Shown here piece by piece: positions 4,181 to 58,858 of a DNA stretch of 64,000 nt. Location of the stretch: sequence record MT612989.1; one strand, written 5' to 3'. The notes beneath the pieces were generated by a model that did no database searches, was not told the origin of the DNA, and saw only the letters and a program-made list of their open reading frames with translations. A program made the position numbers and the translations under genes. Each line of letters starts with the position of its first letter. The first letter of the stretch is position 1.

Positions 4181-5809
4181 ATGATTGGATTTCAACAATT
4201 AAATGAAAACATGAGCGCAACGTACGACTATTATCCGGCTCGCTCGACCAAAGAAAACAAATTCTTTGTGATCGACATGAAAGGCGAAGCCAGAGACATC
4301 GTTGTTTCGTTCACAACTAAAACAAAATCAGATATCGGAAATCGCGGTAAACGTTCTTGGTTCTGTACTGTATCAGCAATGCGCGGCAAAAAAGGCGGTG
4401 TTACTATTCGTGAAATGGGAGATGAACAAAAGCTTCAACAAACTATTGTTAAAGTGGTTCAAGATTTCATGATCAAACGTCGTGCGAATGTCGTTTCAAT
4501 GCGTGTGCAGAAACTAGGTACGGGTAAGATGTTCGACTTGCGCGTTAAAACGTTGTTTAAAAAGCTACGTTACGGCTGTGATACAACTAAGATTATTGGC
4601 GTGGGTGGTGAAGAAATTTCGCAAGATTACAGCTTCTTTATTGTAACCAAACCAGGGTATAATGCCGATAAGCTATTCGAAGCATCTGAAGAAACAATTA
4701 ACGATATTGCGTTAAAAATGTCACTCGAAACTGATATTTCAAGCAAGAAAACGATTATCGTAACTGCCGATGCTGCGTATGACGACTATGAAGATGACGT
4801 ACTAGGTAAATGGGTAGAAGAAAACCCCGCTGCACGTGTTCCAAATGATGTTCTTCAAATGCCTCAATATGAAGCGCGTGTAAGTTCGTCTGTTCGTTCT
4901 CAATTGAATGAAAGCAATGAACATGTTCTTGCTAATGCTGCGAAAGGTTTAATTGATATGAGTTTGAATCTTGAAACTGTGGCAGTTTCATTGAATTCAT
5001 ATATCGCCGAATCGAAGAAGCCTCAAAGCGTTCTGAATAGTATCATGGAATCTCGCTCACGTGCTCATGCAAGTCAGTATGAACGTCTTTCTTTGCAACT
5101 TATGCAGGAAGATTCATTTGCGGGTCTATCGTCACTTACACAAGCGGCTATTGCTAGATACTCCGCGACTCGTTTTTCATGGAAGGTGAATGAAGAGTTA
5201 TTACACGGAACTGGTGTTGATAAAGAATCACAGATTGTCTCACGCATCGACCAAGCGTTTTCTGAAGCTGGTATGATTGCTGGTGGAATGACGTTATATC
5301 GTGGCTGTGAAATGTCAAGTAAACATGTGCGCTCTATTCTTGAATCTGGCTCGTTTGTTTCGACTGCGTTTATCTCAACGTCAATCGACCCTCTTGTTGC
5401 TTGTAAGTTCGTTGAATCAAGCTCTAAGAACATCATTGATTCAACTGCTAAGAATAGTAAATCAGATATGCGTTCTCTGCTTGAGTCAGATAAGAAAATG
5501 AATGTTGTATTCATCATAGAAGCGAGCGGCTTGCCTGTTTTAGCTTCAGGTAAACACGGTATGAAAGACTCAAAAGAGATTATCATCAACCGTAATACGA
5601 TGTTTGAAGCTGACGTTGTTCAAATGTCTGAATACGACGCTGTAATTCGATTGAAAATCAAAGAAGATACGAAGCAAGGTGTATTGTCTGCTTTCAAAAA
5701 GCAAGACCGTTTACACGAGCTTTCAGAAGTAGCTAATTTCATGCGTTCTGTTGATGTAGATGTCGATGCAGATAGACTAACAAAAGAGCGTAGTCCTCTA
5801 ACACCATGA
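4181..5809 (+). CDS. alt: Alt-like NAD:protein ADP-ribosyltransferase
   Basis: C-terminal ART motifs TLYRG, FISTS, xxEIIINR; LNE propeptide; late promoter; position next to gene 30 as in T4. Confidence 0.75.
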   Translation: MIGFQQLNENMSATYDYYPARSTKENKFFVIDMKGEARDIVVSFTTKTKSDIGNRGKRSWFCTVSAMRGKKGGVTIREMGDEQKLQQTIVKVVQDFMIKRRANVVSMRVQKLGTGKMFDLRVKTLFKKLRYGCDTTKIIGVGGEEISQDYSFFIVTKPGYNADKLFEASEETINDIALKMSLETDISSKKTIIVTADAAYDDYEDDVLGKWVEENPAARVPNDVLQMPQYEARVSSSVRSQLNESNEHVLANAAKGLIDMSLNLETVAVSLNSYIAESKKPQSVLNSIMESRSRAHASQYERLSLQLMQEDSFAGLSSLTQAAIARYSATRFSWKVNEELLHGTGVDKESQIVSRIDQAFSEAGMIAGGMTLYRGCEMSSKHVRSILESGSFVSTAFISTSIDPLVACKFVESSSKNIIDSTAKNSKSDMRSLLESDKKMNVVFIIEASGLPVLASGKHGMKDSKEIIINRNTMFEADVVQMSEYDAVIRLKIKEDTKQGVLSAFKKQDRLHELSEVANFMRSVDVDVDADRLTKERSPLTP

Positions 5810-5841: not shown

Positions 5842-6723
5842 TTATCGAATATCTTCTAGTTCATAACCCCAGATATTACTAAAATCTTCTTCTGATTCGA
5901 CGTAATACAATGTATCTTGCTCACATAAAATCATATCACCTGCATCAAGCGCCGCACCTTTTTCACTAATATCAAATGTACGACCTGTTTTAGTGCGAAC
6001 TGTAATATCACCTAGCATTGACAGCCAAATGTCAGCCGAATCTAAGTTATTGAACTTACCACGCGGAGTTGTTGCTTCAATGTGAATAACATCACTCGAT
6101 TTTCGCTCTATGTAAACTCGACCGTGTGGCAATCCAAATCGAATGAAATCTCCGTCGTTGTCTAACCAGAATAACTTAGCCCAAGTGAATGCGTTAGTAT
6201 TTGGGAAAATAACGTACGTTAGTTCTTCTTCTTTGTGAATCCCGTCGTTATGCAGTCTGCGAACTTTCGGTGGGTTATTGTTCTTCAATGTGAAGCTATT
6301 TCCCATGACGTGAACCGTATAGTCCATCTTGTTCGCGTATCGCTCAGCCATACGTTTGTACAGTCGGAAACGTTTGTCTGCATCATTGCGATCTTCATCT
6401 GAGTACGCACTAAACGCAATCTCATCAGGGTTAATCTCAGACGCTTTTTCAAACGTAGCAGCTAGAATCGTACTTAATACTGTCATGGCATCTTTAGGCG
6501 ATCCTTTTGCAAGCGTGTGCGTCCAATTGCCTGTTTCACGATCTTTTCGTTGGAAAGCTACATATATGCTTACACCGCGTGGCGTTTCGCGATCTTGAAT
6601 CGTTGCTAGGTATTGGGTCCCGCCTACTGTGAAACTAGCTTCATTGTGCATAGCATCCCATCTATATGGCACTGGTCGGTCGAACGCTTCAATTAACGTT
6701 TCTCCATGTTCAAAAATGATCAT
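5842..6723 (-). CDS. late hypothetical protein, candidate internal head protein (AFDRP domain)
   Basis: TATAAATA upstream; LIE|AFDRP N-terminus; N-domain paralogous to the C-domain of 51066..51986. Confidence 0.7.
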   Translation of the reverse strand: MIIFEHGETLIEAFDRPVPYRWDAMHNEASFTVGGTQYLATIQDRETPRGVSIYVAFQRKDRETGNWTHTLAKGSPKDAMTVLSTILAATFEKASEINPDEIAFSAYSDEDRNDADKRFRLYKRMAERYANKMDYTVHVMGNSFTLKNNNPPKVRRLHNDGIHKEEELTYVIFPNTNAFTWAKLFWLDNDGDFIRFGLPHGRVYIERKSSDVIHIEATTPRGKFNNLDSADIWLSMLGDITVRTKTGRTFDISEKGAALDAGDMILCEQDTLYYVESEEDFSNIWGYELEDIR

Positions 6724-24893: not shown

Positions 24894-25373
24894 TTATTCG
24901 AAATGTCTGAACTTCTTCAGCTTTTTCTTTTTCTTTTTCTTACCGATAGTTTCAGGACCTGCATTAGTTACAGCACCAGTCGTTTCACCAGAAGCAATCG
25001 ACTCTGGTGAGCTACTACCGTCACCCGCATCACCTGCAACAACAGCTTCTTCGACTCGAATACACTCTTTCGCGAAATCTTCAGATAACCCGTATTCTTT
25101 TGCAAGCTCAATCAGCAACAAATAAGACGCGCCATAATCAAGTGCTGTTTTACCACCTGGTAATGCACCAACCATGCGCTTGATATTTCTCACAGTAACA
25201 TGAAACATCGTCCAGTTACTTTTCTCTTGTGCAGTTACAGGGTCACGCAACTTCTTACCATCTGCGTCGATGATACCCATTCGATATGCTTCCCAACGTT
25301 CAAAACGAAGATGAAGCAAACGAGACAGACGAAGAGCATAAAAACCATCTGCACCACGTTTAGCTACACTCAT
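24894..25373 (-). CDS. T4 gp30.3-like conserved protein
   Basis: F..WEAY..GIID.DG..L...TxQEK...T.FH..V.NIKR; acidic then basic tail. Confidence 0.7.
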   Translation of the reverse strand: MSVAKRGADGFYALRLSRLLHLRFERWEAYRMGIIDADGKKLRDPVTAQEKSNWTMFHVTVRNIKRMVGALPGGKTALDYGASYLLLIELAKEYGLSEDFAKECIRVEEAVVAGDAGDGSSSPESIASGETTGAVTNAGPETIGKKKKKKKLKKFRHFE

Positions 25374-48410: not shown

Positions 48411-48923
48411 ATGATTAAAGAATATCTAAAGAAACAAACCAAGCGCGTAGTTGCAGAATTTGCAAAAGAGTACTACGACATCGAACTTGATAAATCGCTG
48501 ACTAAAAGCAAGATGATCGACGAGTTATTCACACACGAGCTACGCGAGGTTAAAGAACTACCACTAGAATGCTCTGTAATCGAGTCTGAGACGCGCTGTG
48601 AATCAGTCGATGAATCGGACGCGATTGTAGTCAAAGAGCTTTCAGACGACGTTAAGAAAGAATTAGAAGGTGTTTCTGCTAATGCCCCTTTAGGTGATGA
48701 AAACGTAACATTAGTAATCAAGGACGAATTCAAGCCTAAATGGATGCCTACTTATCGCCGTGGTGATGAGCTATATCAGCCAGTTGCGCATGATGTGATT
48801 CATGATTGGAATATAGGTCGACGCGACTCTCACGAATTGAAGACGATTGAATATTGGGTTAAGCGAAATGGTCATCTTTTAGTTCACGACCGTCTTTCGA
48901 ACAGCTTCATTTATCTGAGGTAA
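48411..48923 (+). CDS. inh: Inh-like minor head protein / prohead protease inhibitor, copy 1
   Basis: K..VAEFAKEYYDIELDKSLTKSKMIDE; position near uvsW as in T4. Confidence 0.7.
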   Translation: MIKEYLKKQTKRVVAEFAKEYYDIELDKSLTKSKMIDELFTHELREVKELPLECSVIESETRCESVDESDAIVVKELSDDVKKELEGVSANAPLGDENVTLVIKDEFKPKWMPTYRRGDELYQPVAHDVIHDWNIGRRDSHELKTIEYWVKRNGHLLVHDRLSNSFIYLR

Positions 48924-49415: not shown

Positions 49416-49445
49416 TTGACAACTCAAATGTTTTTGCTTATTATA
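49416..49445 (+). promoter_or_regulatory. early promoter
   Basis: TTGACA then TATTAT with a 17-nt spacer. Confidence 0.7.
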
Positions 49446-50402: not shown

Positions 50403-50431
50403 AAAAAGGGTGACTTCGGTCGCCCTTTTTT
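50403..50431 (+). terminator. intrinsic terminator
   Basis: GGGTGAC-TTCG-GTCGCCC followed by a U tract. Confidence 0.9.
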
Positions 50432-50439
50432 CGTTTGCG

Positions 50440-50447
50440 TCTAAATA
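50440..50447 (+). promoter_or_regulatory. late promoter variant TCTAAATA
   Basis: 23 nt upstream of ATG 50470. Confidence 0.7.
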
Positions 50448-50469: not shown

Positions 50470-51063
50470 ATGATAGAATTTTTAACAGAAATGGACAAAG
50501 CTAAACAAACCGGTAGATGGGCTCAATTTAAAGCAGCAACATCGGGTTCGAAAGGTGAAGTTAAAAAGCGTATGCAGCGCAAAGGTGGCTTCTGGGGTGT
50601 GTTTGCAGGTTTGATCGCGAGTGCGACAGCATCGGGTGAACTTAGAAAGCACAATAAGTCACTAGAAGACCATAAGCTAAGAATGGAGCGTGCAGCAGTG
50701 AACACAATTCACAGTCTGAATGTTCTTAAAGACGTAATCGAGCTTGAACGTCCTCGTGACGAAGTAATGAAAGCTGCAAAGCGTTTAAAGCTTGATAACA
50801 TGGAAATGAAGAAATACGCAACCGAAATGATTCGTGTCGTAGATGAATACAAGCGTGTTCATGACGAAGATAAGAAGGCAGGTGCGTTTCGTTTTAATGT
50901 GAAAGAATACGACCGTCATGATTTTCGTGAGATTTACCATCACTTGAACATGATTGAAGATAGCACATTTTACGTCGATAAAGCAGCGTCATCGGCTATG
51001 ACTGGCGATACTGAATACGCAATTCGTATGATTCGCAATATTACAAACGCAGCAACGAGGTAA
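50470..51063 (+). CDS. late hypothetical protein, candidate internal head protein
   Basis: MIEFLTE| propeptide; Gly-rich hydrophobic segment; helical. Confidence 0.7.
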   Translation: MIEFLTEMDKAKQTGRWAQFKAATSGSKGEVKKRMQRKGGFWGVFAGLIASATASGELRKHNKSLEDHKLRMERAAVNTIHSLNVLKDVIELERPRDEVMKAAKRLKLDNMEMKKYATEMIRVVDEYKRVHDEDKKAGAFRFNVKEYDRHDFREIYHHLNMIEDSTFYVDKAASSAMTGDTEYAIRMIRNITNAATR

Positions 51064-51065
51064 TA

Positions 51066-51986
51066 ATGAGCATAATTTTTGAACGCGCTACATTGAAAAC
51101 TCGAAAAGGTAGTGCAGTAAAACGCAGCAAGTGGGGCGTGGGTAAAGACATTGGCGGTTCATTGTATGTTCACATTGACTATATCCCAGATGAGTTCAAG
51201 CAAATGGTTGCTGATGCTCGTACTCAAGTATCAATTGCAAACTCACAATTTACTCCGAATGTAGTACGAATTGACTACAAGAAAGGTGGAGTTGCTTTCT
51301 ACGATTCAGTTGAATTTGATACTGTACAAGAACCAGCCGCGGGTATGATGATTACTTACAGAGACGGTGTTGTTTCTAAACCACGTCAAGTAAACCAAAT
51401 ATGGCATCACAAATGGTTGTGGGTTGGTGATGATTATAGAGGGTTTGATACTTCTCAGTCATATGACCGCTCGGCTCAGTGGCTAGATCATGACGATATC
51501 CCATTTGCCAAGATCGGTAATAAGAAGACATGGCGTGAATGGCTGTCTTCGGTTAACTTGACTGAGGCATTTGACCGACCATCTAAAATACACTGGGTTG
51601 AGAAGAGAATTCACAGTTGGGGTGGTACGTTTACGGTAAACGGGGACGAATACGCGATTGCAATACAGTATCAAGAACAAAACGATGCATGGGAACTTGT
51701 GTTCTTAGGTATGAACAGTTCGGGTGATTATACTTACAGCGCAACAGGTCGAGGCAATATGTATGGTGTGTTTGCGACAGTAATGAGCGGTATGCGTGAA
51801 TTTATAGACGAGCGAGAGCCAGAAACAATTTATTTCAGTGCAGAGCGAGATATAAAAAACGACAGTGATTCGAGAATAAAACTATACAATCGTTTAGTAA
51901 AACGATATGCTGATACATTACCGAATTACACATATAAAACGGTCGAAGGGAAAGTCTCGACTAAAACATATTTCATTAGAAAATAA
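51066..51986 (+). CDS. two-domain late protein: PT-associated-like domain plus AFDRP domain
   Basis: VGK..LYVH, FDT..EP, IWHHK..V..DY; internal LTE|AFDRP at residues 165-172. Confidence 0.7.
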   Translation: MSIIFERATLKTRKGSAVKRSKWGVGKDIGGSLYVHIDYIPDEFKQMVADARTQVSIANSQFTPNVVRIDYKKGGVAFYDSVEFDTVQEPAAGMMITYRDGVVSKPRQVNQIWHHKWLWVGDDYRGFDTSQSYDRSAQWLDHDDIPFAKIGNKKTWREWLSSVNLTEAFDRPSKIHWVEKRIHSWGGTFTVNGDEYAIAIQYQEQNDAWELVFLGMNSSGDYTYSATGRGNMYGVFATVMSGMREFIDEREPETIYFSAERDIKNDSDSRIKLYNRLVKRYADTLPNYTYKTVEGKVSTKTYFIRK

Positions 51987-51993
51987 GAGAGCA

Positions 51994-52092
51994 ATGAAAA
52001 CATTTCAAGATTTTCATGAATTCAGCAGATTTCGTACCTGCTTGATAATTAAAAAGCGCATTTTTTGCGCTTTTTTTGTATCTATTGGTTGA
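51994..52092 (+). pseudogene. remnant or mini-gene beginning with a T4-type capsid targeting sequence (MKTFQDFHE)
   Basis: frame reads through the terminator; shifted frame ends SADFVPA-TGA-TAA just before the terminator. Confidence 0.35.
52051..52077 (+). terminator. intrinsic terminator
   Basis: AAAAAGCGCA-TTTT-TGCGCTTTTTT. Confidence 0.8.
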
Positions 52093-52159: not shown

Positions 52160-53344
52160 ATGACTTCACTAAACAAATTCGAAAACACTTACACAATCAA
52201 ATCAATCTACATGAGCGAGTTTGAAGCGCGTATTGCATCTACTAACAAGATTGCAAAACGTCTTGGCGTTGCTGAAATCACTTTTGAGTTCGGTGAAGTG
52301 TACTCAAAAGTCATTATTATCAATCACCAAAAGCATCGTGAATACTACGTTAATGTTACTATTCGCGGTGAATACCCGTCAACTAAAGGTTGGTCTTTCT
52401 TGACTCAACTTGACCACGCGACAAATCTTATTCGTTCAAACAACGAAACGAATCACCGTCATCTTCTAGGCGACACAACATGCGATCACTGTAACTCTAA
52501 TCGTCAACGCAATGTAACTTACGTCATTCAGAATGAAGAGACTAAAGAAGAAATGCGCGTCGGTGGTTCATGCTTGAAATACTACTTGCCGACTAAATCT
52601 ATCGACTCACTAGCGACGTTCTACACTGCAATCGCTGATTTCGGTGATGAAGAGTCTTGGGGTGGTGGTTCTCGTAAAATTTCATATAACGCGCTTCAGA
52701 TTCTTGCTTGGGCTGCTATGTATGTTGAACACAAAGGTTGTTATCACGGTGGCGGTGTGACTCGTCAATGGGTTCTTGACATGATTAATGCAGGTACACC
52801 TGCACTTCGTACCGAACGCGATGCAATGTTAGATGAATATGATTACGACAATTGTGAAGAGCAAGCAAAAGAGATTTTAGAATGGGTTGCAACTCAAGAA
52901 GCGACTAACGATTTCATGCATAACGTCATCGCGTCTTGTTCTGCACCATTCATCGAGTACAAACAAACTGGTTACATTGCAGCGGCTATCTTAGCTTTCA
53001 ACAAAGCAAAAGAGCGCGTGATTCTAGCTAAACGCGAAGCTGAACGTAAAGCAGATTTGCCAGAATCTGAGTACGTCGGTACTATCAAAAAACGCGAGAA
53101 CTTTAATGTCACTCTTGAAGCGGTTATCGTTTCTGAAGGCTACTACGGTGACACGTTCATTCACAAGTTTCGCGATGGACAAAACAATCTAATCGTGTGG
53201 TTTGGTTCAAAGCGTCTACGTGATAACGACGGCGAAGCGATTGAGAAAGGCGTTTCAGTAACTGTAAAAGCGACTGTAAAAGCGCACGAAGAGTTTCGCG
53301 ACGAAAAACAGACAATCGTACAGCGTGTAGCGTTCGTCGCTTAG
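52160..53344 (+). CDS. early protein with a Cys/His metal site and C-terminal OB-fold-like domain
   Basis: CDHC...VGGSCL; YVG..K.R...WF...V.ATVK.H.EF..EKQT.V.RV. Confidence 0.7.
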   Translation: MTSLNKFENTYTIKSIYMSEFEARIASTNKIAKRLGVAEITFEFGEVYSKVIIINHQKHREYYVNVTIRGEYPSTKGWSFLTQLDHATNLIRSNNETNHRHLLGDTTCDHCNSNRQRNVTYVIQNEETKEEMRVGGSCLKYYLPTKSIDSLATFYTAIADFGDEESWGGGSRKISYNALQILAWAAMYVEHKGCYHGGGVTRQWVLDMINAGTPALRTERDAMLDEYDYDNCEEQAKEILEWVATQEATNDFMHNVIASCSAPFIEYKQTGYIAAAILAFNKAKERVILAKREAERKADLPESEYVGTIKKRENFNVTLEAVIVSEGYYGDTFIHKFRDGQNNLIVWFGSKRLRDNDGEAIEKGVSVTVKATVKAHEEFRDEKQTIVQRVAFVA

Positions 53345-53748: not shown

Positions 53749-54246
53749 CTATTTAATTGTGATGAATTGACTGTTGCGAGTTTCACGCACTAGCACCTTG
53801 CCGTCTTTCTCGACATAATGCAAGATTGATTTAACTACGCGAAGATCTGATGCAAGTACATCATCAAGCGAACCATCCCCTGCGATAATAGATTTCGCAG
53901 ATTTAACCGCGCTATCAGAAGCAGTCATGAAAAATTCACGACCACGACGGAATGGCAATGGCATTGGTTCAAATGATTCATCGATTGGTAGTTCTACTTT
54001 CTCAACGACTTCAGGTTTCACTTCAGAAATTTCTTTAATTTCTTTGGTTTCTTCTTTCGTCTCTACAAGAAGTTCTTCCCATGGTAGTTGTTTCAATGGC
54101 GTTTTACCTTCAGCTTCTTCTACAAGCTTCTTAGCCATTGCGCCTTTTGATTTACGACGGTCAAGTTCGATGCCGTAATATTCTTTTGCAAACTCGTCTA
54201 GTTTTTCTTTAGTTAACGACTCTGCATGTTTTTTCAATTGACTCAT
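53749..54246 (-). CDS. Inh-like protein, copy 2
   Basis: KEKLDEFAKEYYGIELDRRKSKGAMAK; C-terminal H.L.R..RNSQFITI similar to copy 1. Confidence 0.7.
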   Translation of the reverse strand: MSQLKKHAESLTKEKLDEFAKEYYGIELDRRKSKGAMAKKLVEEAEGKTPLKQLPWEELLVETKEETKEIKEISEVKPEVVEKVELPIDESFEPMPLPFRRGREFFMTASDSAVKSAKSIIAGDGSLDDVLASDLRVVKSILHYVEKDGKVLVRETRNSQFITIK

Positions 54247-56159: not shown

Positions 56160-57257
56160 ATGAAAGCGAAAATGAACTTAATGCAAAAATACATTGTCGG
56201 TGGCGCAGTACGCGACTCTATACTGAAACACGTAGAGGGCTGGTCTAGATTCCCGAAAGATATTGATTACGTCGTCACTGGTTGTACACACGAACAAATG
56301 ATGGCTATGTACGGCGAACCTATCGGTGCTGATTTCCCTGTTTGGCTAGATCGAAACAACAATGAAGTCGCGCTTGCTCGTGTTGAACGTAGCACTGGTG
56401 ACAAAACTACTGACTTCACTTTCACAACTGATGGGGTCACGTTAGAAGATGACTTATCACGTCGAGATCTGACTATCAACTCAATGGCTATACCTGACAT
56501 GACGCCAAATAGTCTGTTTATGTTTGGTTCAACTGATGATGTCATCGACCCGTACGGCGGTCTAGATGACTTGAAGAACAAGATTCTCCGTCATACAACT
56601 GAAGCGTTTGCCGAAGACCCGTTGCGTGTTCTGCGCGTCGCTCGTTTCTATGCTCGATACTACAGCATGGGATTTACAGTCGCAGAAGAGACAGTTGAGC
56701 TATGCAAGAAAATGATCAACGACGGTATGCTTGAGAATCTGCCGAAAGAACGTGTTTGGCTTGAAACACAAAAAGCACTGTCAGAAAAAGACGCGCACAT
56801 GTACTTTGCATTCTTAGGTCAAGTGGGATTCTGTGCTGCACCATCTGCACGCGAACTACTTGAGTTGAAGTACTACAACCGTATGCCATTTAAATGCGAA
56901 GACGTTCAGATGATTGCTAAGTGGGCATCGTTTGATCATCGTAATCGTTACACTCGTAAGTTCGGTGCGACTAAGCAGTATGACAAAGCATCTGAGTTGC
57001 TGATGTCACTTAACGTTGCAAATGTATTCGACGAGACTATTGTAATTGTATTGCGTAAGCTAGGTGCATATAAAGAAGGTCTTCCGTTTGAAGTTGCGCT
57101 ATCACAAGTGAAAGATGTTGTGAAGCGTCAAATTATTACCGATTTGATTGAACTGACACGTAATGTCAAAGTAGACGTTGAGCCGGGCCCTGAATATGGT
57201 GCAGCATTAGAAGACGCACGAATGACAATCGCATACGATTATTTGCATTGTCTATAA
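56160..57257 (+). CDS. cca: tRNA nucleotidyltransferase (CCA-adding enzyme, class II)
   Basis: VGGAVRD, DIDYVV, ALARVER, EDDLSRRDLTINSMA, EDPLRVLRVARF, ERVW.E. Confidence 0.95.
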   Translation: MKAKMNLMQKYIVGGAVRDSILKHVEGWSRFPKDIDYVVTGCTHEQMMAMYGEPIGADFPVWLDRNNNEVALARVERSTGDKTTDFTFTTDGVTLEDDLSRRDLTINSMAIPDMTPNSLFMFGSTDDVIDPYGGLDDLKNKILRHTTEAFAEDPLRVLRVARFYARYYSMGFTVAEETVELCKKMINDGMLENLPKERVWLETQKALSEKDAHMYFAFLGQVGFCAAPSARELLELKYYNRMPFKCEDVQMIAKWASFDHRNRYTRKFGATKQYDKASELLMSLNVANVFDETIVIVLRKLGAYKEGLPFEVALSQVKDVVKRQIITDLIELTRNVKVDVEPGPEYGAALEDARMTIAYDYLHCL

Positions 57258-57313: not shown

Positions 57314-58858
57314 TTATAGACCCTTAACGAATACACGACGGAAGTAAGCGTTTTTACCCATTGAAGCTGCAACAGGCGCGCCGTTACCAACTTTTTCAGC
57401 AGCCTTAGTAGGATCTGCGAATGGGTTAACTTGAATACCGTAACGAGTTTTGAAACCAATTACAGGTTGGAAGTTCTTGCTGTCTGAACCACGTAGTGGA
57501 GTCAGCGGTACGTATGGTGAGTAGAACACACCCGCGTCCATTTCAGTAGAACCTTTGAAACCAACTGTGAAGTAATCGTTCACTGCGTATTGGTCGATGA
57601 ACACTTTGAAGCGACCACCTAGAACACCCGCGAACACAGTTTGGTTTGTGTCAGTGTTCATTGAACCGTCTTGCATACCTTGTGCAGCAGGGCCAACAAG
57701 AGTATCAGTCATTGATAGTGCAGAAACTACGTTGCGTGATGCAATGATGAAGTTACCGTTACCACGACCAGTTTGACGACCGATTTCGTTCGCTTCTTTC
57801 TCAATTTGAATTAGTAGAGCTTTGTAAGCTTCACCAGCCCAACGAGCACCTTTAACGTCTACAGCGTCTGCGAAGTCGAATACACCCGCTGCGCCTTGAC
57901 CTTGAGTCCAACCAGACTTACCGATTTGCGCTTGAGAGTTAACTAGGTTAACGATTTCGCGGTTAAGCTCAACCATAACTTCGTTAGCAAGAATACCGCT
58001 AAGTTCAGCGTCAGCGTCTAGACCGTGTACAGCACGTAGATCTTGTGCAAGCTCGATTGAGTATTGAGCTTTCAATTGACGTGATTTCGCTTCAACAACT
58101 TGTTTGTCGATGCGGAATGACATCTCGTTCCACTCGTTGTTGCTTGAACCGTTGAAGTTCTCTTGTAGTTCAGCCTGAGATGTTGCCATACCAGCGTCGA
58201 TCTCAACTAGAAGACCACCTGCAACTGCGTCAGTGTATTCTGTAGCAGTCATTTCACCTGCAACTGCTAGAGTAACAGCGCCAAGTGCTAGGAAGTAACG
58301 AGTGTCAACGTCGCCGCCAGAAGTAGTTACTTCAGCTTTGTACGGAGTACCGTCAGTTGCAGCACCAGTAGTTGGGAAATCTGCAATTGTTGATGCAGCA
58401 GCTTGACCAGAGAACGAAGCGTCAGCTTGACGAGTCGGGTGGAAAGCTTCTTTACCAGTTAGCGGGTCTTTACCGTATACTGAGCGAAGTGTGAATACTT
58501 GGCTAGTTGGGCCAGTCATTGGCTGAACACCAGCGATATCGAATGCGATAAGCTGAGGAATAGCACGACGAACCATACCCATTACAGTCGGACCGATGTT
58601 TGTTACTGCACCAGTAGTAACACCTTGAGCGATGTTAGACGGATCGTAACCATGGTCACCGTTAACTACAGCTTCGTTTAGACCAGCATTGAATGCTTCG
58701 ATTAACTGTGGGTCACGGTACATTGGATCGTTGTTGATGTCGCGATCTTGGTTTTCAAAGATTTTCGACATGATTTTTTGCTTAGTTGCAGTCGCAATCT
58801 CTGGCATTTCCGCACCGTCTGCTTCAAGCAATTCTTTCCATTTTTCAGTTAGGTTCAT
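57314..58858 (-). CDS. 23: major capsid protein gp23
   Basis: KWKELLE, MVRRAIPQLIAFDIAGVQPM, KSRQLKAQYSIELAQDLRAVHG, YFRRVFVKGL. Confidence 0.99.
   Translation of the reverse strand: MNLTEKWKELLEADGAEMPEIATATKQKIMSKIFENQDRDINNDPMYRDPQLIEAFNAGLNEAVVNGDHGYDPSNIAQGVTTGAVTNIGPTVMGMVRRAIPQLIAFDIAGVQPMTGPTSQVFTLRSVYGKDPLTGKEAFHPTRQADASFSGQAAASTIADFPTTGAATDGTPYKAEVTTSGGDVDTRYFLALGAVTLAVAGEMTATEYTDAVAGGLLVEIDAGMATSQAELQENFNGSSNNEWNEMSFRIDKQVVEAKSRQLKAQYSIELAQDLRAVHGLDADAELSGILANEVMVELNREIVNLVNSQAQIGKSGWTQGQGAAGVFDFADAVDVKGARWAGEAYKALLIQIEKEANEIGRQTGRGNGNFIIASRNVVSALSMTDTLVGPAAQGMQDGSMNTDTNQTVFAGVLGGRFKVFIDQYAVNDYFTVGFKGSTEMDAGVFYSPYVPLTPLRGSDSKNFQPVIGFKTRYGIQVNPFADPTKAAEKVGNGAPVAASMGKNAYFRRVFVKGL

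What the first reader, a model, noticed from the sequence alone, without database searches (positions are those of the whole stretch)
51066..51557. Late, probably capsid-packaged protein carrying a phosphorothioation-associated domain
Seen: residues 1-164 contain VGKDIGGSLYVH...NVVRIDYKKGGVAFYDSVEFDTVQEP...QIWHHKWLWVGDDY. Recalled knowledge: this matches the layout of the non-catalytic repeated domain of 'DNA phosphorothioation-associated putative methyltransferase' (TIGR04096-type: VGK..ALYVH..LVK..ISYL.YPDFD.DPHP..PILHRKE.FV..DY), found beside dnd genes. The gene is in a late TCTAAATA operon and starts MSIIFE|. Inference: an injected decoy or inhibitor of Dnd/PT-based defence, analogous to T4 IPI versus GmrSD.
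Basis: partly seen in the sequence, partly recalled or inferred. Interest (0 to 1): 0.85.

Follow-up and report, generated by a model that had tools for sequence, protein, structure and literature searches.

The report
Late phage protein with uncharacterised domain
A late gene of a KVP40-like Vibrio phage carries an uncharacterised, enzyme-like domain that is truly related to a repeat in a bacterial phosphorothioation-linked protein, but across viruses this domain keeps company mostly with tRNA/RNA-end enzymes, so an anti-phosphorothioation role is not the best-supported reading.

Summary
The sequence observation holds. ORF 51066-51986 (306 aa, not 164) is vBValMR11Z_189 of a KVP40-like phage.

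- **Homology:** residues about 10-164 are homologous to the domain that occurs twice in TIGR04096 proteins (hhalign 97.2%, E 2.9e-11). Three real TIGR04096 genes sit beside SspABCD phosphorothioation genes.
- **Family:** TIGR04096 is a divergent side branch. The family has at least 1120 protein clusters, mostly viral. They occur as stand-alone genes, fusions, or inside 3-6 kaa proteins. There is no Pfam model and no solved fold relative. K27, E89 and H114-H115-K116 are invariant, which looks enzyme-like.
- **Partners:** class-I methyltransferase, CCA-adding tRNA nucleotidyltransferase (fused, adjacent or within 8 kb in 20 of 71 loci), NFACT-R, Tpt1, TROVE, GNAT and ART-PolyVal.
- **Late:** supported. 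A two-gene unit has a conserved TCTAAATA and terminators on both sides.
- **Packaged:** plausible but untested. A disordered 6-residue leader ending I-F-E is shared with an N-domain-less paralog, the co-transcribed gene and the Alt-like ADP-ribosyltransferase.
- **C-terminal half:** a GNAT-like cassette that differs between sister phages.

Verdict: the domain and the late operon are real. A decoy against phosphorothioation-based defence is possible but disfavoured. A nucleic-acid (probably tRNA/RNA-end) directed effector is more likely.

The parts
50408..50431 (+). Intrinsic-terminator hairpin plus T-run that insulates the unit from upstream transcription
   Evidence: Read. dG -17.1 kcal/mol, z -5.35. 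Conserved in KVP40 (L006) and phage 1.081.O (L071). Not listed by the scan tool.
50440..50447 (+). Late-promoter-like motif TCTAAATA
   Evidence: 22 nt before the 197-aa gene. The same motif precedes the tail-fibre and tail-tube genes. Conserved at about -30 in KVP40 and 1.081.O.
50470..51063 (+). Co-transcribed 197-aa gene (phrog_16422, unknown function); starts MIEFLTE
   Evidence: The gene pair is conserved, and its end overlaps the N-domain gene's start, in L071 and L073.
51066..51986 (+). Target gene vBValMR11Z_189, 306 aa (KVP40.0371 family, phrog_16075)
51066..51083 (+). Six-residue leader MSIIFE (candidate head-targeting / protease-cleavage signal)
   Evidence: Residues 1-5 have pLDDT < 50. 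The same leader is on the N-domain-less paralog and on stand-alone homologs. It is enriched on N-terminal versus internal copies, 34/63 vs 9/56.
51090..51557 (+). N-terminal 'WHHKW' domain core (residues about 9-164), homolog of the TIGR04096 repeat
   Evidence: AF2 pLDDT 91. No PDB fold match.
51558..51986 (+). C-terminal GNAT-like module (DUF6934-like), an exchangeable cassette
   Evidence: Pfam DUF6934 E 5.8e-6, just below the cut-off. Foldseek hits to GNAT acetyltransferases at prob 0.99-1.0. Only 26% identical to the KVP40 counterpart while the N-domain is 96%.
52051..52075 (+). Terminator hairpin closing the two-gene unit
   Evidence: dG -12.5 kcal/mol, z -4.25. A similar hairpin follows the KVP40 gene.
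52160..53344 (+). 394-aa neighbour (phrog_2319, unknown function) that recurs beside N-domain genes
   Evidence: Syntenic in L005, L006 and L071. Also follows an N-domain ORF directly in the distant contigs L040/L041 (27% identity, E 3e-24).
5842..6723 (-). Paralog of the C-module (293 aa, phrog_6387) that starts MIIFE but lacks the N-domain
   Evidence: TATAAATA 24 nt upstream. Adjacent to the Alt-like gene.
4181..5809 (+). Alt-like RNA-polymerase ADP-ribosyltransferase with a similar N-terminus (MIGFQQLNE)
   Evidence: Annotation; N-terminus.
56160..57257 (+). CCA-adding tRNA nucleotidyltransferase, the family's most recurrent partner, 4.2 kb downstream
   Evidence: Annotation. Association across loci.

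Best explanation
The gene encodes a late, modular effector built as [short leader]-[WHHKW domain]-[GNAT-like cassette].

Shown:
- It is transcribed with the upstream 197-aa gene from a conserved late-type promoter, between two terminators.
- The N-domain belongs to a very large, mostly viral family with enzyme-like invariant residues and no solved fold relative.
- The family is distantly homologous to the repeat that flanks the methyltransferase in Ssp-linked TIGR04096 proteins.
- In viruses it is fused to, or sits next to, enzymes that act on RNA or tRNA ends, above all the CCA-adding enzyme. It is also embedded in polyvalent-type giant proteins.

Inferred:
- The leader ending I-F-E directs the protein into the prohead core and is trimmed by the gp21-type prohead protease. 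The protein would then enter the next host with the DNA, as T4 Alt and the internal proteins do.
- The WHHKW domain binds or processes a nucleic-acid end, most likely tRNA/RNA 3' ends. It would work alongside the phage CCA-adding enzyme to keep translation running against host RNA-targeting defences.
- The variable GNAT-like cassette supplies a second, lineage-specific activity or target contact.
- The phosphorothioation link belongs to the bacterial side branch of the family, not to the phage protein.
For: Operon: TCTAAATA at 50440 with the upstream terminator at 50408-50431 and the downstream one at 52051-52075. The motif and the upstream terminator are conserved in KVP40 and 1.081.O; the downstream hairpin recurs in KVP40.

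Leader: disordered in AF2. Absent from many N-terminal copies and rare before internal ones. Shared with the paralog, the 197-aa partner and the Alt-like protein.

Location: head-gene neighbourhood (inh paralogs, gp23, scaffold, protease).

Family: 1120 clusters. Invariant K27, E89, H114, H115, K116.

Partners: CCA-adding enzyme fusions in L018, L021, L035, L043, L044. Adjacent in L025, L027, L073, L074. Within 8 kb in the window, L005, L006, L071, L066/L067 and L009-L014. Total 20 of 71 loci, about 6 lineages of 35 locus groups. TROVE next door plus ART-PolyVal and CCA nearby. NFACT-R, Tpt1, YafQ, GNAT, ART-PolyVal, ParB_N and NlpC/P60 fusions. The polyvalent-protein concept is from PMC5512222. 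Phage RNA-repair toolkits that include CCA enzymes, TROVE and KptA are described in PMC7824862.
Against: - No biochemical or proteomic datum exists for any family member, and none was found in the held literature.
- The leader has only 6 residues, and [LI]-x-E occurs early in 11 of 54 window proteins.
- My leader pattern was defined after seeing the cases.
- The commonest fusion partner is a generic class-I methyltransferase (10 of 71), not an RNA enzyme.
- 51 of 71 loci show no CCA enzyme in the flanks. tRNA genes are not adjacent.
- The five CCA fusions are syntenic and may be one event.
- No fold relative exists to suggest a chemistry.
- The Ssp-linked branch argues that at least some members act on DNA.
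Confidence: 0.35

Rival explanations
1. A late cytoplasmic accessory factor that is not packaged. The protein is made late and stays in the infected cell, where the WHHKW domain helps the CCA-adding enzyme or other nucleic-acid transactions. The N-terminal I-F-E element is only a conserved N-terminal peptide.
For: Same family contexts as the best explanation. CCA-enzyme fusions carry similar leaders although such enzymes are not known virion components. [LI]-x-E is a low-information motif, present in 11 of 54 window proteins.
Against: The same leader sits on proteins that share no domain: the paralog without the N-domain, the 197-aa protein and the Alt-like protein. The leader is disordered and dispensable for the fold. 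The gene lies in the head-gene neighbourhood. The family is present in polyvalent-type proteins.
Confidence: 0.27
2. One reading: an injected decoy or inhibitor of phosphorothioation-based defence (Dnd/Ssp). It would mimic the repeat of the Ssp-linked TIGR04096 protein and so sequester PT-DNA or an Ssp component.
For: True homology to the TIGR04096 repeat. Three of three annotated TIGR04096 genes lie next to SspB/SspC, and one of them also next to SspA and SspD. Late operon and candidate packaging leader. From my own knowledge, Ssp systems were first described in a Vibrio.
Against: Only about 21% identity to TIGR04096 copies, with no sign of recent capture. The viral family is far larger and more strongly conserved than the bacterial branch. 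Invariant His/Lys/Glu residues suggest activity rather than mimicry. No viral locus examined has PT genes, and the partners are RNA-end enzymes. The role of TIGR04096 itself is unknown: no PADLOC model and not treated in PMC10853773.
Confidence: 0.12
3. A DNA-directed module of injected polyvalent-type proteins. The WHHKW domain binds DNA or DNA ends and recruits partner enzymes (methyltransferase, ParB-like, GNAT) to protect or modify the incoming genome. This would be analogous to the methylase-containing polyvalent proteins.
For: The methyltransferase is the commonest fusion partner, 10 of 71. The TIGR04096 architecture is domain-methyltransferase-domain beside a DNA-modification system. 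ParB_N fusion. Embedded in giant viral proteins.
Against: The methyltransferases hit the generic Methyltransf_23 model, not DNA-methylase families. Strong recurrent association with tRNA nucleotidyltransferase, NFACT-R, Tpt1 and TROVE.
Confidence: 0.16

Closest known systems
TIGR04096 'DNA phosphorothioation-associated putative methyltransferase' (NCBIfam)
   Same: The phage N-domain is homologous to the domain found before and after the methyltransferase core (hhalign 97.2%). Shared core residues: K27, Y34, H36, F84-D85, P90, H114, K116, Y124.
   Different: The phage protein has no methyltransferase domain and one copy instead of two. It scores 11.4 bits against a cut-off of 150. H115, W113 and E89 are replaced in TIGR04096 copies. 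There is no Ssp/Dnd neighbourhood.
T4 internal proteins (IPI-III) and Alt: head-packaged, protease-trimmed, injected proteins (established T4 biology)
   Same: Late expression, head-gene neighbourhood, and a short N-terminal peptide ending hydrophobic-x-Glu. This phage's own Alt-like protein has a similar N-terminus. BFVD fold hits include Alt-type ADP-ribosyltransferases.
   Different: No sequence relation to any internal protein came back from any search. The leader is shorter. Packaging and cleavage are untested. The region of the Alt fold match is unresolved, and local HMMs found no link to the window's Alt-like protein.
Polyvalent proteins of phages and conjugative elements (Iyer et al. 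2017, PMC5512222)
   Same: The domain occurs in multidomain and giant viral proteins together with ART-PolyVal, ParB_N, NlpC/P60, GNAT and methyltransferase modules.
   Different: This protein has only two modules. The domain matches none of the Pfam LPD, PBECR or PolyVal models.
Phage RNA-repair toolkits (CCA-adding enzyme, TROVE/Ro60, KptA/Tpt1, RNA ligases; PMC7824862)
   Same: Recurrent fusion or adjacency to CCA-adding enzymes, with TROVE, Tpt1 and NFACT-R as partners.
   Different: The domain itself is not a described component. No chemistry can be assigned and there is no solved fold relative.
GNAT acetyltransferases / Pfam DUF6934 (C-terminal module only)
   Same: The fold of residues about 175-306 matches RimL, SpeG and other GNATs (prob 0.99-1.0). 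DUF6934 at E 5.8e-6.
   Different: E-values are modest (1e-3 to 1e-2) with 6-10% identity. The DUF6934 score (26.8) is just under the cut-off (27). The loop where GNATs bind CoA pyrophosphate is not conserved between the two C-module types (read).

Membership tests
TIGR04096 (dnd_rel_methyl) | Whole-protein score at or above the curated cut-off (150 bits) | tested here: not met
   11.4 bits, E 0.096. The best family member reaches E 3.7e-6.
TIGR04096 (dnd_rel_methyl) | Class-I SAM methyltransferase core | tested here: not met
   No methyltransferase hit in Pfam or NCBIfam for the 306-aa protein.
TIGR04096 (dnd_rel_methyl) | The flanking repeated domain | tested here: met
   hhalign 97.2%, E 2.9e-11, 141 columns. 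hmmsearch finds one or two copies in each real member. The phage protein has one copy only.
TIGR04096 (dnd_rel_methyl) | Neighbourhood of phosphorothioation genes | tested here: not met
   Real members lie beside SspA-D. The window and the related viral loci show no such genes.
T4-type head-packaged internal proteins / Alt | Late transcription | tested here: met
   By sequence only: conserved TCTAAATA between two terminators. No expression data.
T4-type head-packaged internal proteins / Alt | N-terminal targeting peptide ending in the prohead-protease motif (hydrophobic-x-Glu) | tested here: inconclusive
   MSIIFE is present, disordered and shared with unrelated proteins. However, the motif has low information content (11 of 54 proteins).
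T4-type head-packaged internal proteins / Alt | Presence in virions in processed form | not testable with these tools
   No virion proteomics for KVP40-like phages found in the held library.
Polyvalent proteins (PMC5512222) | Several domains of disparate activity in one polypeptide of a phage or plasmid | tested here: inconclusive
   The target has two modules (WHHKW + GNAT-like). Relatives have up to thousands of residues with ART-PolyVal, ParB_N and others.
GNAT superfamily (C-module) | GNAT fold | tested here: met
   Foldseek prob 0.99-1.0 to many GNAT structures over about 135 columns. The model's pLDDT is 57-90 in this half.
GNAT superfamily (C-module) | Acetyl-CoA binding signature | tested here: inconclusive
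   No Pfam GNAT model hit. The beta4-alpha3 loop is Gly-rich in the window type but not in the KVP40 type.

The most novel reading that the evidence does not exclude
The WHHKW domain is a new enzyme fold, widespread in viruses, that acts on nucleic-acid ends (for example tRNA 3' ends) as a partner of CCA-adding enzymes. In T4-like Vibrio phages it is delivered pre-made from the capsid. Its bacterial offshoot in TIGR04096 proteins would then be an uncharacterised effector or partner of Ssp phosphorothioation systems that uses the same chemistry.
Probability: 0.2. Interest if true: 0.8.

Novelty: new variant of a known kind. Interest (0 to 1): 0.55.

Why it matters
- The domain is abundant: at least 1120 clusters at 50% identity. 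It is strongly conserved and confidently modelled, yet it has no Pfam family, no solved relative and no assigned function.
- It links three active topics: phage tRNA and RNA-repair counter-defence, injected polyvalent effectors, and the still-incomplete parts list of Ssp phosphorothioation systems.
- Identifying its chemistry would annotate thousands of viral proteins, including giant ones, and one orphan Ssp-linked bacterial family.
- For this phage, it nominates a small set of candidate head-delivered proteins that share a leader.

Tried and rejected
- **ThrRS hit:** the PDB sequence profile gave only a weak hit to the ThrRS editing region (E 0.32). I rejected it because Foldseek found no ThrRS-like fold.
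- **HKD and PD-(D/E)xK readings:** I considered reading H114-x-K116...D122 as an HKD (phospholipase-D) motif, and a PD-(D/E)xK reading. Both were dropped: the spacing varies between branches and no fold support exists.
- **Giant proteins:** Pfam and PDB sequence searches were almost empty.
- **Neighbour genes:** no Pfam hits, only 'unknown function' PHROGs, and no PDB hits.
- **tRNA gene proximity:** none, except in L072.
- **Alt link:** the window's Alt-like protein is not hit by the N-domain HMM and only marginally by the C-module HMM. The Alt fold hits in BFVD therefore stay unresolved.
- **C-module search:** the large-database search found only 3 proteins.
- **Literature:** no virion proteomics or expression data for KVP40-like phages. 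Nothing for TIGR04096. The 2016 RNA-repair survey is not held.

Full report
**1. What is at the coordinates**

The window is 100% identical to Vibrio phage vB_ValM_R11Z, a KVP40-like member of Schizotequatrovirus. The finding's start is the ATG of a + strand ORF, 51066..51986, of 306 aa. This is gene vBValMR11Z_189, annotated as a hypothetical protein; its KVP40 ortholog is KVP40.0371. All the quoted peptide stretches are present.

The finding's end, 51557 (residue 164), is a domain boundary and not the gene end. Relatives in other phages and metagenomes consist of the first ~165 residues alone, at 168-192 aa. In the related Vibrio phage 1.081.O the syntenic gene is a stand-alone protein of 170 aa.

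**2. The recalled likeness to TIGR04096**

The window's own sequence hits TIGR04096 only at E 0.096 and 11.4 bits, against a cut-off of 150. The hit covers residues 20-161 against profile positions 320-464 of 478. Three further results make the relation solid.
- 12 of 17 family members hit TIGR04096 on their own, with a best E of 3.7e-6.
- I found three annotated TIGR04096 proteins of 666-724 aa on plasmids. A profile of the phage domain finds an N-terminal copy in all three and a C-terminal copy in two. An alignment shows the third's C-terminal copy is degenerate.
- Profile-profile comparison gives 97.2% probability, E 2.9e-11, over 141 columns at 21% identity.

So 'repeated domain' is right. 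PADLOC identifies the neighbours of these genes as SspA, SspB, SspC and SspD, with E-values down to 0. The phosphorothioation association of TIGR04096 therefore holds, for the Ssp type. The TIGR04096 protein itself matches no PADLOC model. It is also not treated in the comparative study PMC10853773.

**3. The domain family**

A profile search of 1.84 billion representative proteins finds 1120 clusters at E ≤ 1e-3 and 829 at E ≤ 1e-10. They include:
- stand-alone proteins of 150-190 aa;
- fusions of 200-1400 aa;
- proteins of 3000-6451 aa with the domain in the middle.

A motif-based scan found 54 viral contigs against 3 cellular loci, all MAGs. That pattern favours the viral form of the motif.

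No Pfam model covers the domain. The AF2 model is confident (pLDDT 91.3, pTM 0.85), yet Foldseek finds no solved relative (best E 0.5, TM ≤ 0.3).

Conservation is enzyme-like.
- In 71 diverse relatives G26, K27, E89, P90, H114, H115, K116, W117, V120, Y124 and F127 are invariant (window numbering).
- R20, Y34, H36, Y39 and D85 are nearly invariant in the same set.
- The TIGR04096 copies keep K27, Y34, H36, F84-D85, P90, H114, K116 and Y124. They replace W113, H115 and E89.

'Non-catalytic' is therefore not supported, though no chemistry can be assigned.

**4. The company the domain keeps**

Pfam scans gave the following partners.

| Source | Partners found |
|---|---|
| Census of 71 mid-size relatives | Methyltransf_23 in 10; CCA-adding enzyme in 2; NFACT-R in 2; GNAT in 2-3; one each of ART-PolyVal, YafQ RNase, NlpC/P60, Tpt1/KptA, ParB_N, GP88 and DUF5662 |
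| Viral host ORFs | Three fusions to a CCA-adding tRNA nucleotidyltransferase with an HD domain (L018, L021, L035); one NFACT-R fusion (L011); one GNAT and one methyltransferase inside ORFs of 1.3-1.7 kaa |

A local HMM for the CCA enzyme finds it in 20 of 71 N-domain loci.
- Fused: L018, L021, L035, L043, L044.
- Adjacent: L025, L027, L073, L074.
- Within 2-8 kb: the remaining 11 loci in the count. The window's own copy, 4.2 kb downstream, shows the same arrangement but is not among the 71 loci.

After collapsing redundancy there are 35 locus groups. The CCA association then covers about six lineages, because the five fusions are syntenic.

In a T4-like contig the stand-alone gene follows a TROVE (Ro60-like) gene, with ART-PolyVal and a CCA enzyme downstream. 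These partners are the phage RNA-repair toolkit described in PMC7824862 and the domain repertoire of polyvalent proteins (PMC5512222). tRNA genes themselves are not adjacent. No viral locus examined contains phosphorothioation genes.

**5. Is the gene late?**

TCTAAATA at 50440-50447 lies 22 nt before the 197-aa gene. That gene is separated from the target's ATG by 2 nt. The same motif precedes the tail-fibre and tail-tube genes, and TATAAATA precedes the capsid, scaffold and vertex genes.

Directly upstream of the motif is a hairpin plus T-run at 50408-50431 (dG -17.1 kcal/mol, z -5.35). Downstream of the target is another at 52051-52075 (dG -12.5 kcal/mol, z -4.25). The upstream hairpin and the motif, with their spacing, are conserved in KVP40 and in phage 1.081.O.

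The upstream terminator matters. A strong sigma-70-like promoter at 49416 (11 of 12 matches) would otherwise read through into the unit. I regard 'late two-gene unit' as supported by sequence. No expression data were found.

**6. Is the protein packaged?**

The evidence is indirect.

*For packaging:*
- Residues 1-5 are disordered in both models.
- Many N-terminal copies of the domain start directly at the L-K-T-x-K-G-S core.
- A hydrophobic-x-Glu element precedes 34 of 63 N-terminal copies but only 9 of 56 internal ones. The sequences in this count are partly redundant.
- The window's paralog of the C-module (5842..6723) has no N-domain, yet starts MIIFE and has TATAAATA 24 nt upstream.
- The co-transcribed 197-aa protein starts MIEFLTE, and the Alt-like ADP-ribosyltransferase starts MIGFQQLNE. 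In contig L073 both the 197-aa homolog and the N-domain gene start MIEF[M/I]TE.
- A leader shared by proteins with no common domain, one of them Alt-like, resembles established T4 biology: head targeting and trimming after hydrophobic-x-Glu by the prohead protease.
- The gene lies in the head-gene region, between two paralogs of the prohead-protease inhibitor gene.

*Against packaging:*
- The leader is only six residues long.
- The motif occurs early in 11 of 54 window proteins.
- My leader pattern was written after seeing the cases.
- CCA-enzyme fusions carry similar leaders.
- No virion proteomics for this phage group is in the held library.

I put packaging at roughly even odds.

**7. The C-terminal half**

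Residues 165-306 score just under the DUF6934 cut-off (26.8 against 27 bits). In the full-length model (pLDDT 83) this half matches GNAT acetyltransferases only (probability 0.99-1.0, E 1e-3 to 1e-2, about 135 columns).

Between this phage and KVP40 the N-domain is 96% identical but the C-module is 26-28% identical. The flanking genes are 86-92% identical. The C-module therefore behaves as an exchangeable cassette.

The viral fold library returns 38 hits at E ≤ 1e-3. They include Alt-type ADP-ribosyltransferases and Zeta-toxin, deaminase and ParB fusions. The output does not say which half of the query matched. Local HMMs did not link either half to the window's Alt-like protein.

**8. Interpretation**

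The specific inference, a decoy or inhibitor of Dnd/PT defence, rests only on distant homology to a bacterial side branch whose own role is unknown. Against it:
- the viral family is much larger and more conserved than that branch;
- its invariant residues look enzyme-like;
- its recurrent partners are RNA-end enzymes.

My best explanation has confidence 0.35. It is a late, probably head-delivered, two-module effector whose N-domain acts on or binds nucleic-acid ends, most likely tRNA/RNA ends alongside the CCA-adding enzyme.

The rivals are:

| Rival explanation | Confidence |
|---|---|
| Same function but not packaged | 0.27 |
| DNA-directed module of polyvalent-type proteins | 0.16 |
| The anti-PT decoy | 0.12 |
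Noticed in passing
window 48411-48923 (+) and 53749-54246 (-): Two paralogous 'prohead protease inhibitor' genes (phrog_8608 / Phage_Inh_C type) bracket the + strand cluster of unknown genes that holds the target. Their N-terminal regions share a block ending ...FAKEYY-x-IELD.
   Followed up: partly
window 5842-6723 (-), next to 4181-5809 (+): A 293-aa paralog of the target's C-module starts with the same MIIFE leader but has no N-domain. It has TATAAATA 24 nt upstream and sits beside the Alt-like RNA-polymerase ADP-ribosyltransferase gene.
   Followed up: partly
window 52160-53344 (+); L040/L041 6465-7739: The 394-aa gene downstream of the target (phrog_2319, Cys/His-rich middle region, no Pfam or PDB hit) again follows an N-domain ORF directly in distant viral contigs (27% identity). 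This may be a conserved functional partner.
   Followed up: partly
window 51558-51986 vs L006 6493-6963: Sister phages carry a 96%-identical N-domain fused to C-modules only 26-28% identical, while the flanking genes are 86-92% identical. This indicates cassette exchange or very fast evolution of the C-terminus.
   Followed up: yes
L059 8992-10992, L060 8926-11100, L061 8980-11007 (plasmids): TIGR04096 genes lie next to SspB/SspC (plus SspA/SspD in L061) but match no PADLOC model. This is an uncharacterised candidate partner of Ssp phosphorothioation systems with the architecture domain-methyltransferase-domain.
   Followed up: partly
P0041, P0045-P0048, P0080 and viral ORFs in L028, L030, L034 (3000-6451 aa): Giant metagenomic and viral proteins carry the domain mid-chain and have almost no Pfam or PDB sequence hits (only a DnaJ domain in P0041). 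This is largely unannotated sequence that may be polyvalent-type.
   Followed up: partly
window 50408-50431 (+): A strong terminator hairpin (dG -17.1 kcal/mol, z -5.35) was not listed by the consensus scan tool, although it seems to fit the tool's stated criteria. It is conserved in KVP40 and phage 1.081.O.
   Followed up: yes
window 24894-25373 (-): A 159-aa CDS annotated 'major capsid protein' lies among replication genes (primase, helicase). The true gp23-type capsid gene is at 57314-58858. The label looks like a misannotation.
   Followed up: no
L062 7986-8438 (Vibrio sp. THAF64 plasmid pTHAF64_c); H61-H70: Stand-alone, leaderless copies of the domain occur on Vibrio plasmids and megaplasmids. 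One is a 96-kb plasmid with phage-like genes (Ref nuclease, integrases).
   Followed up: partly
BFVD hits, (e.g. E1A2E2, A0A410T5F4, A0A2L0UZ96): The full-length model matches Alt-type ADP-ribosyltransferases of several T4-like phages and Zeta-toxin, deaminase and ParB fusion proteins at probability 1.0. Which half of the query is shared could not be resolved.
   Followed up: partly
L066 6089-8525: In a T4-like metagenomic contig a TROVE (Ro60-like) gene is followed by a 29-codon ORF and then the stand-alone N-domain gene. An ART-PolyVal gene and a CCA-adding enzyme lie 7 kb downstream.
   Followed up: partly
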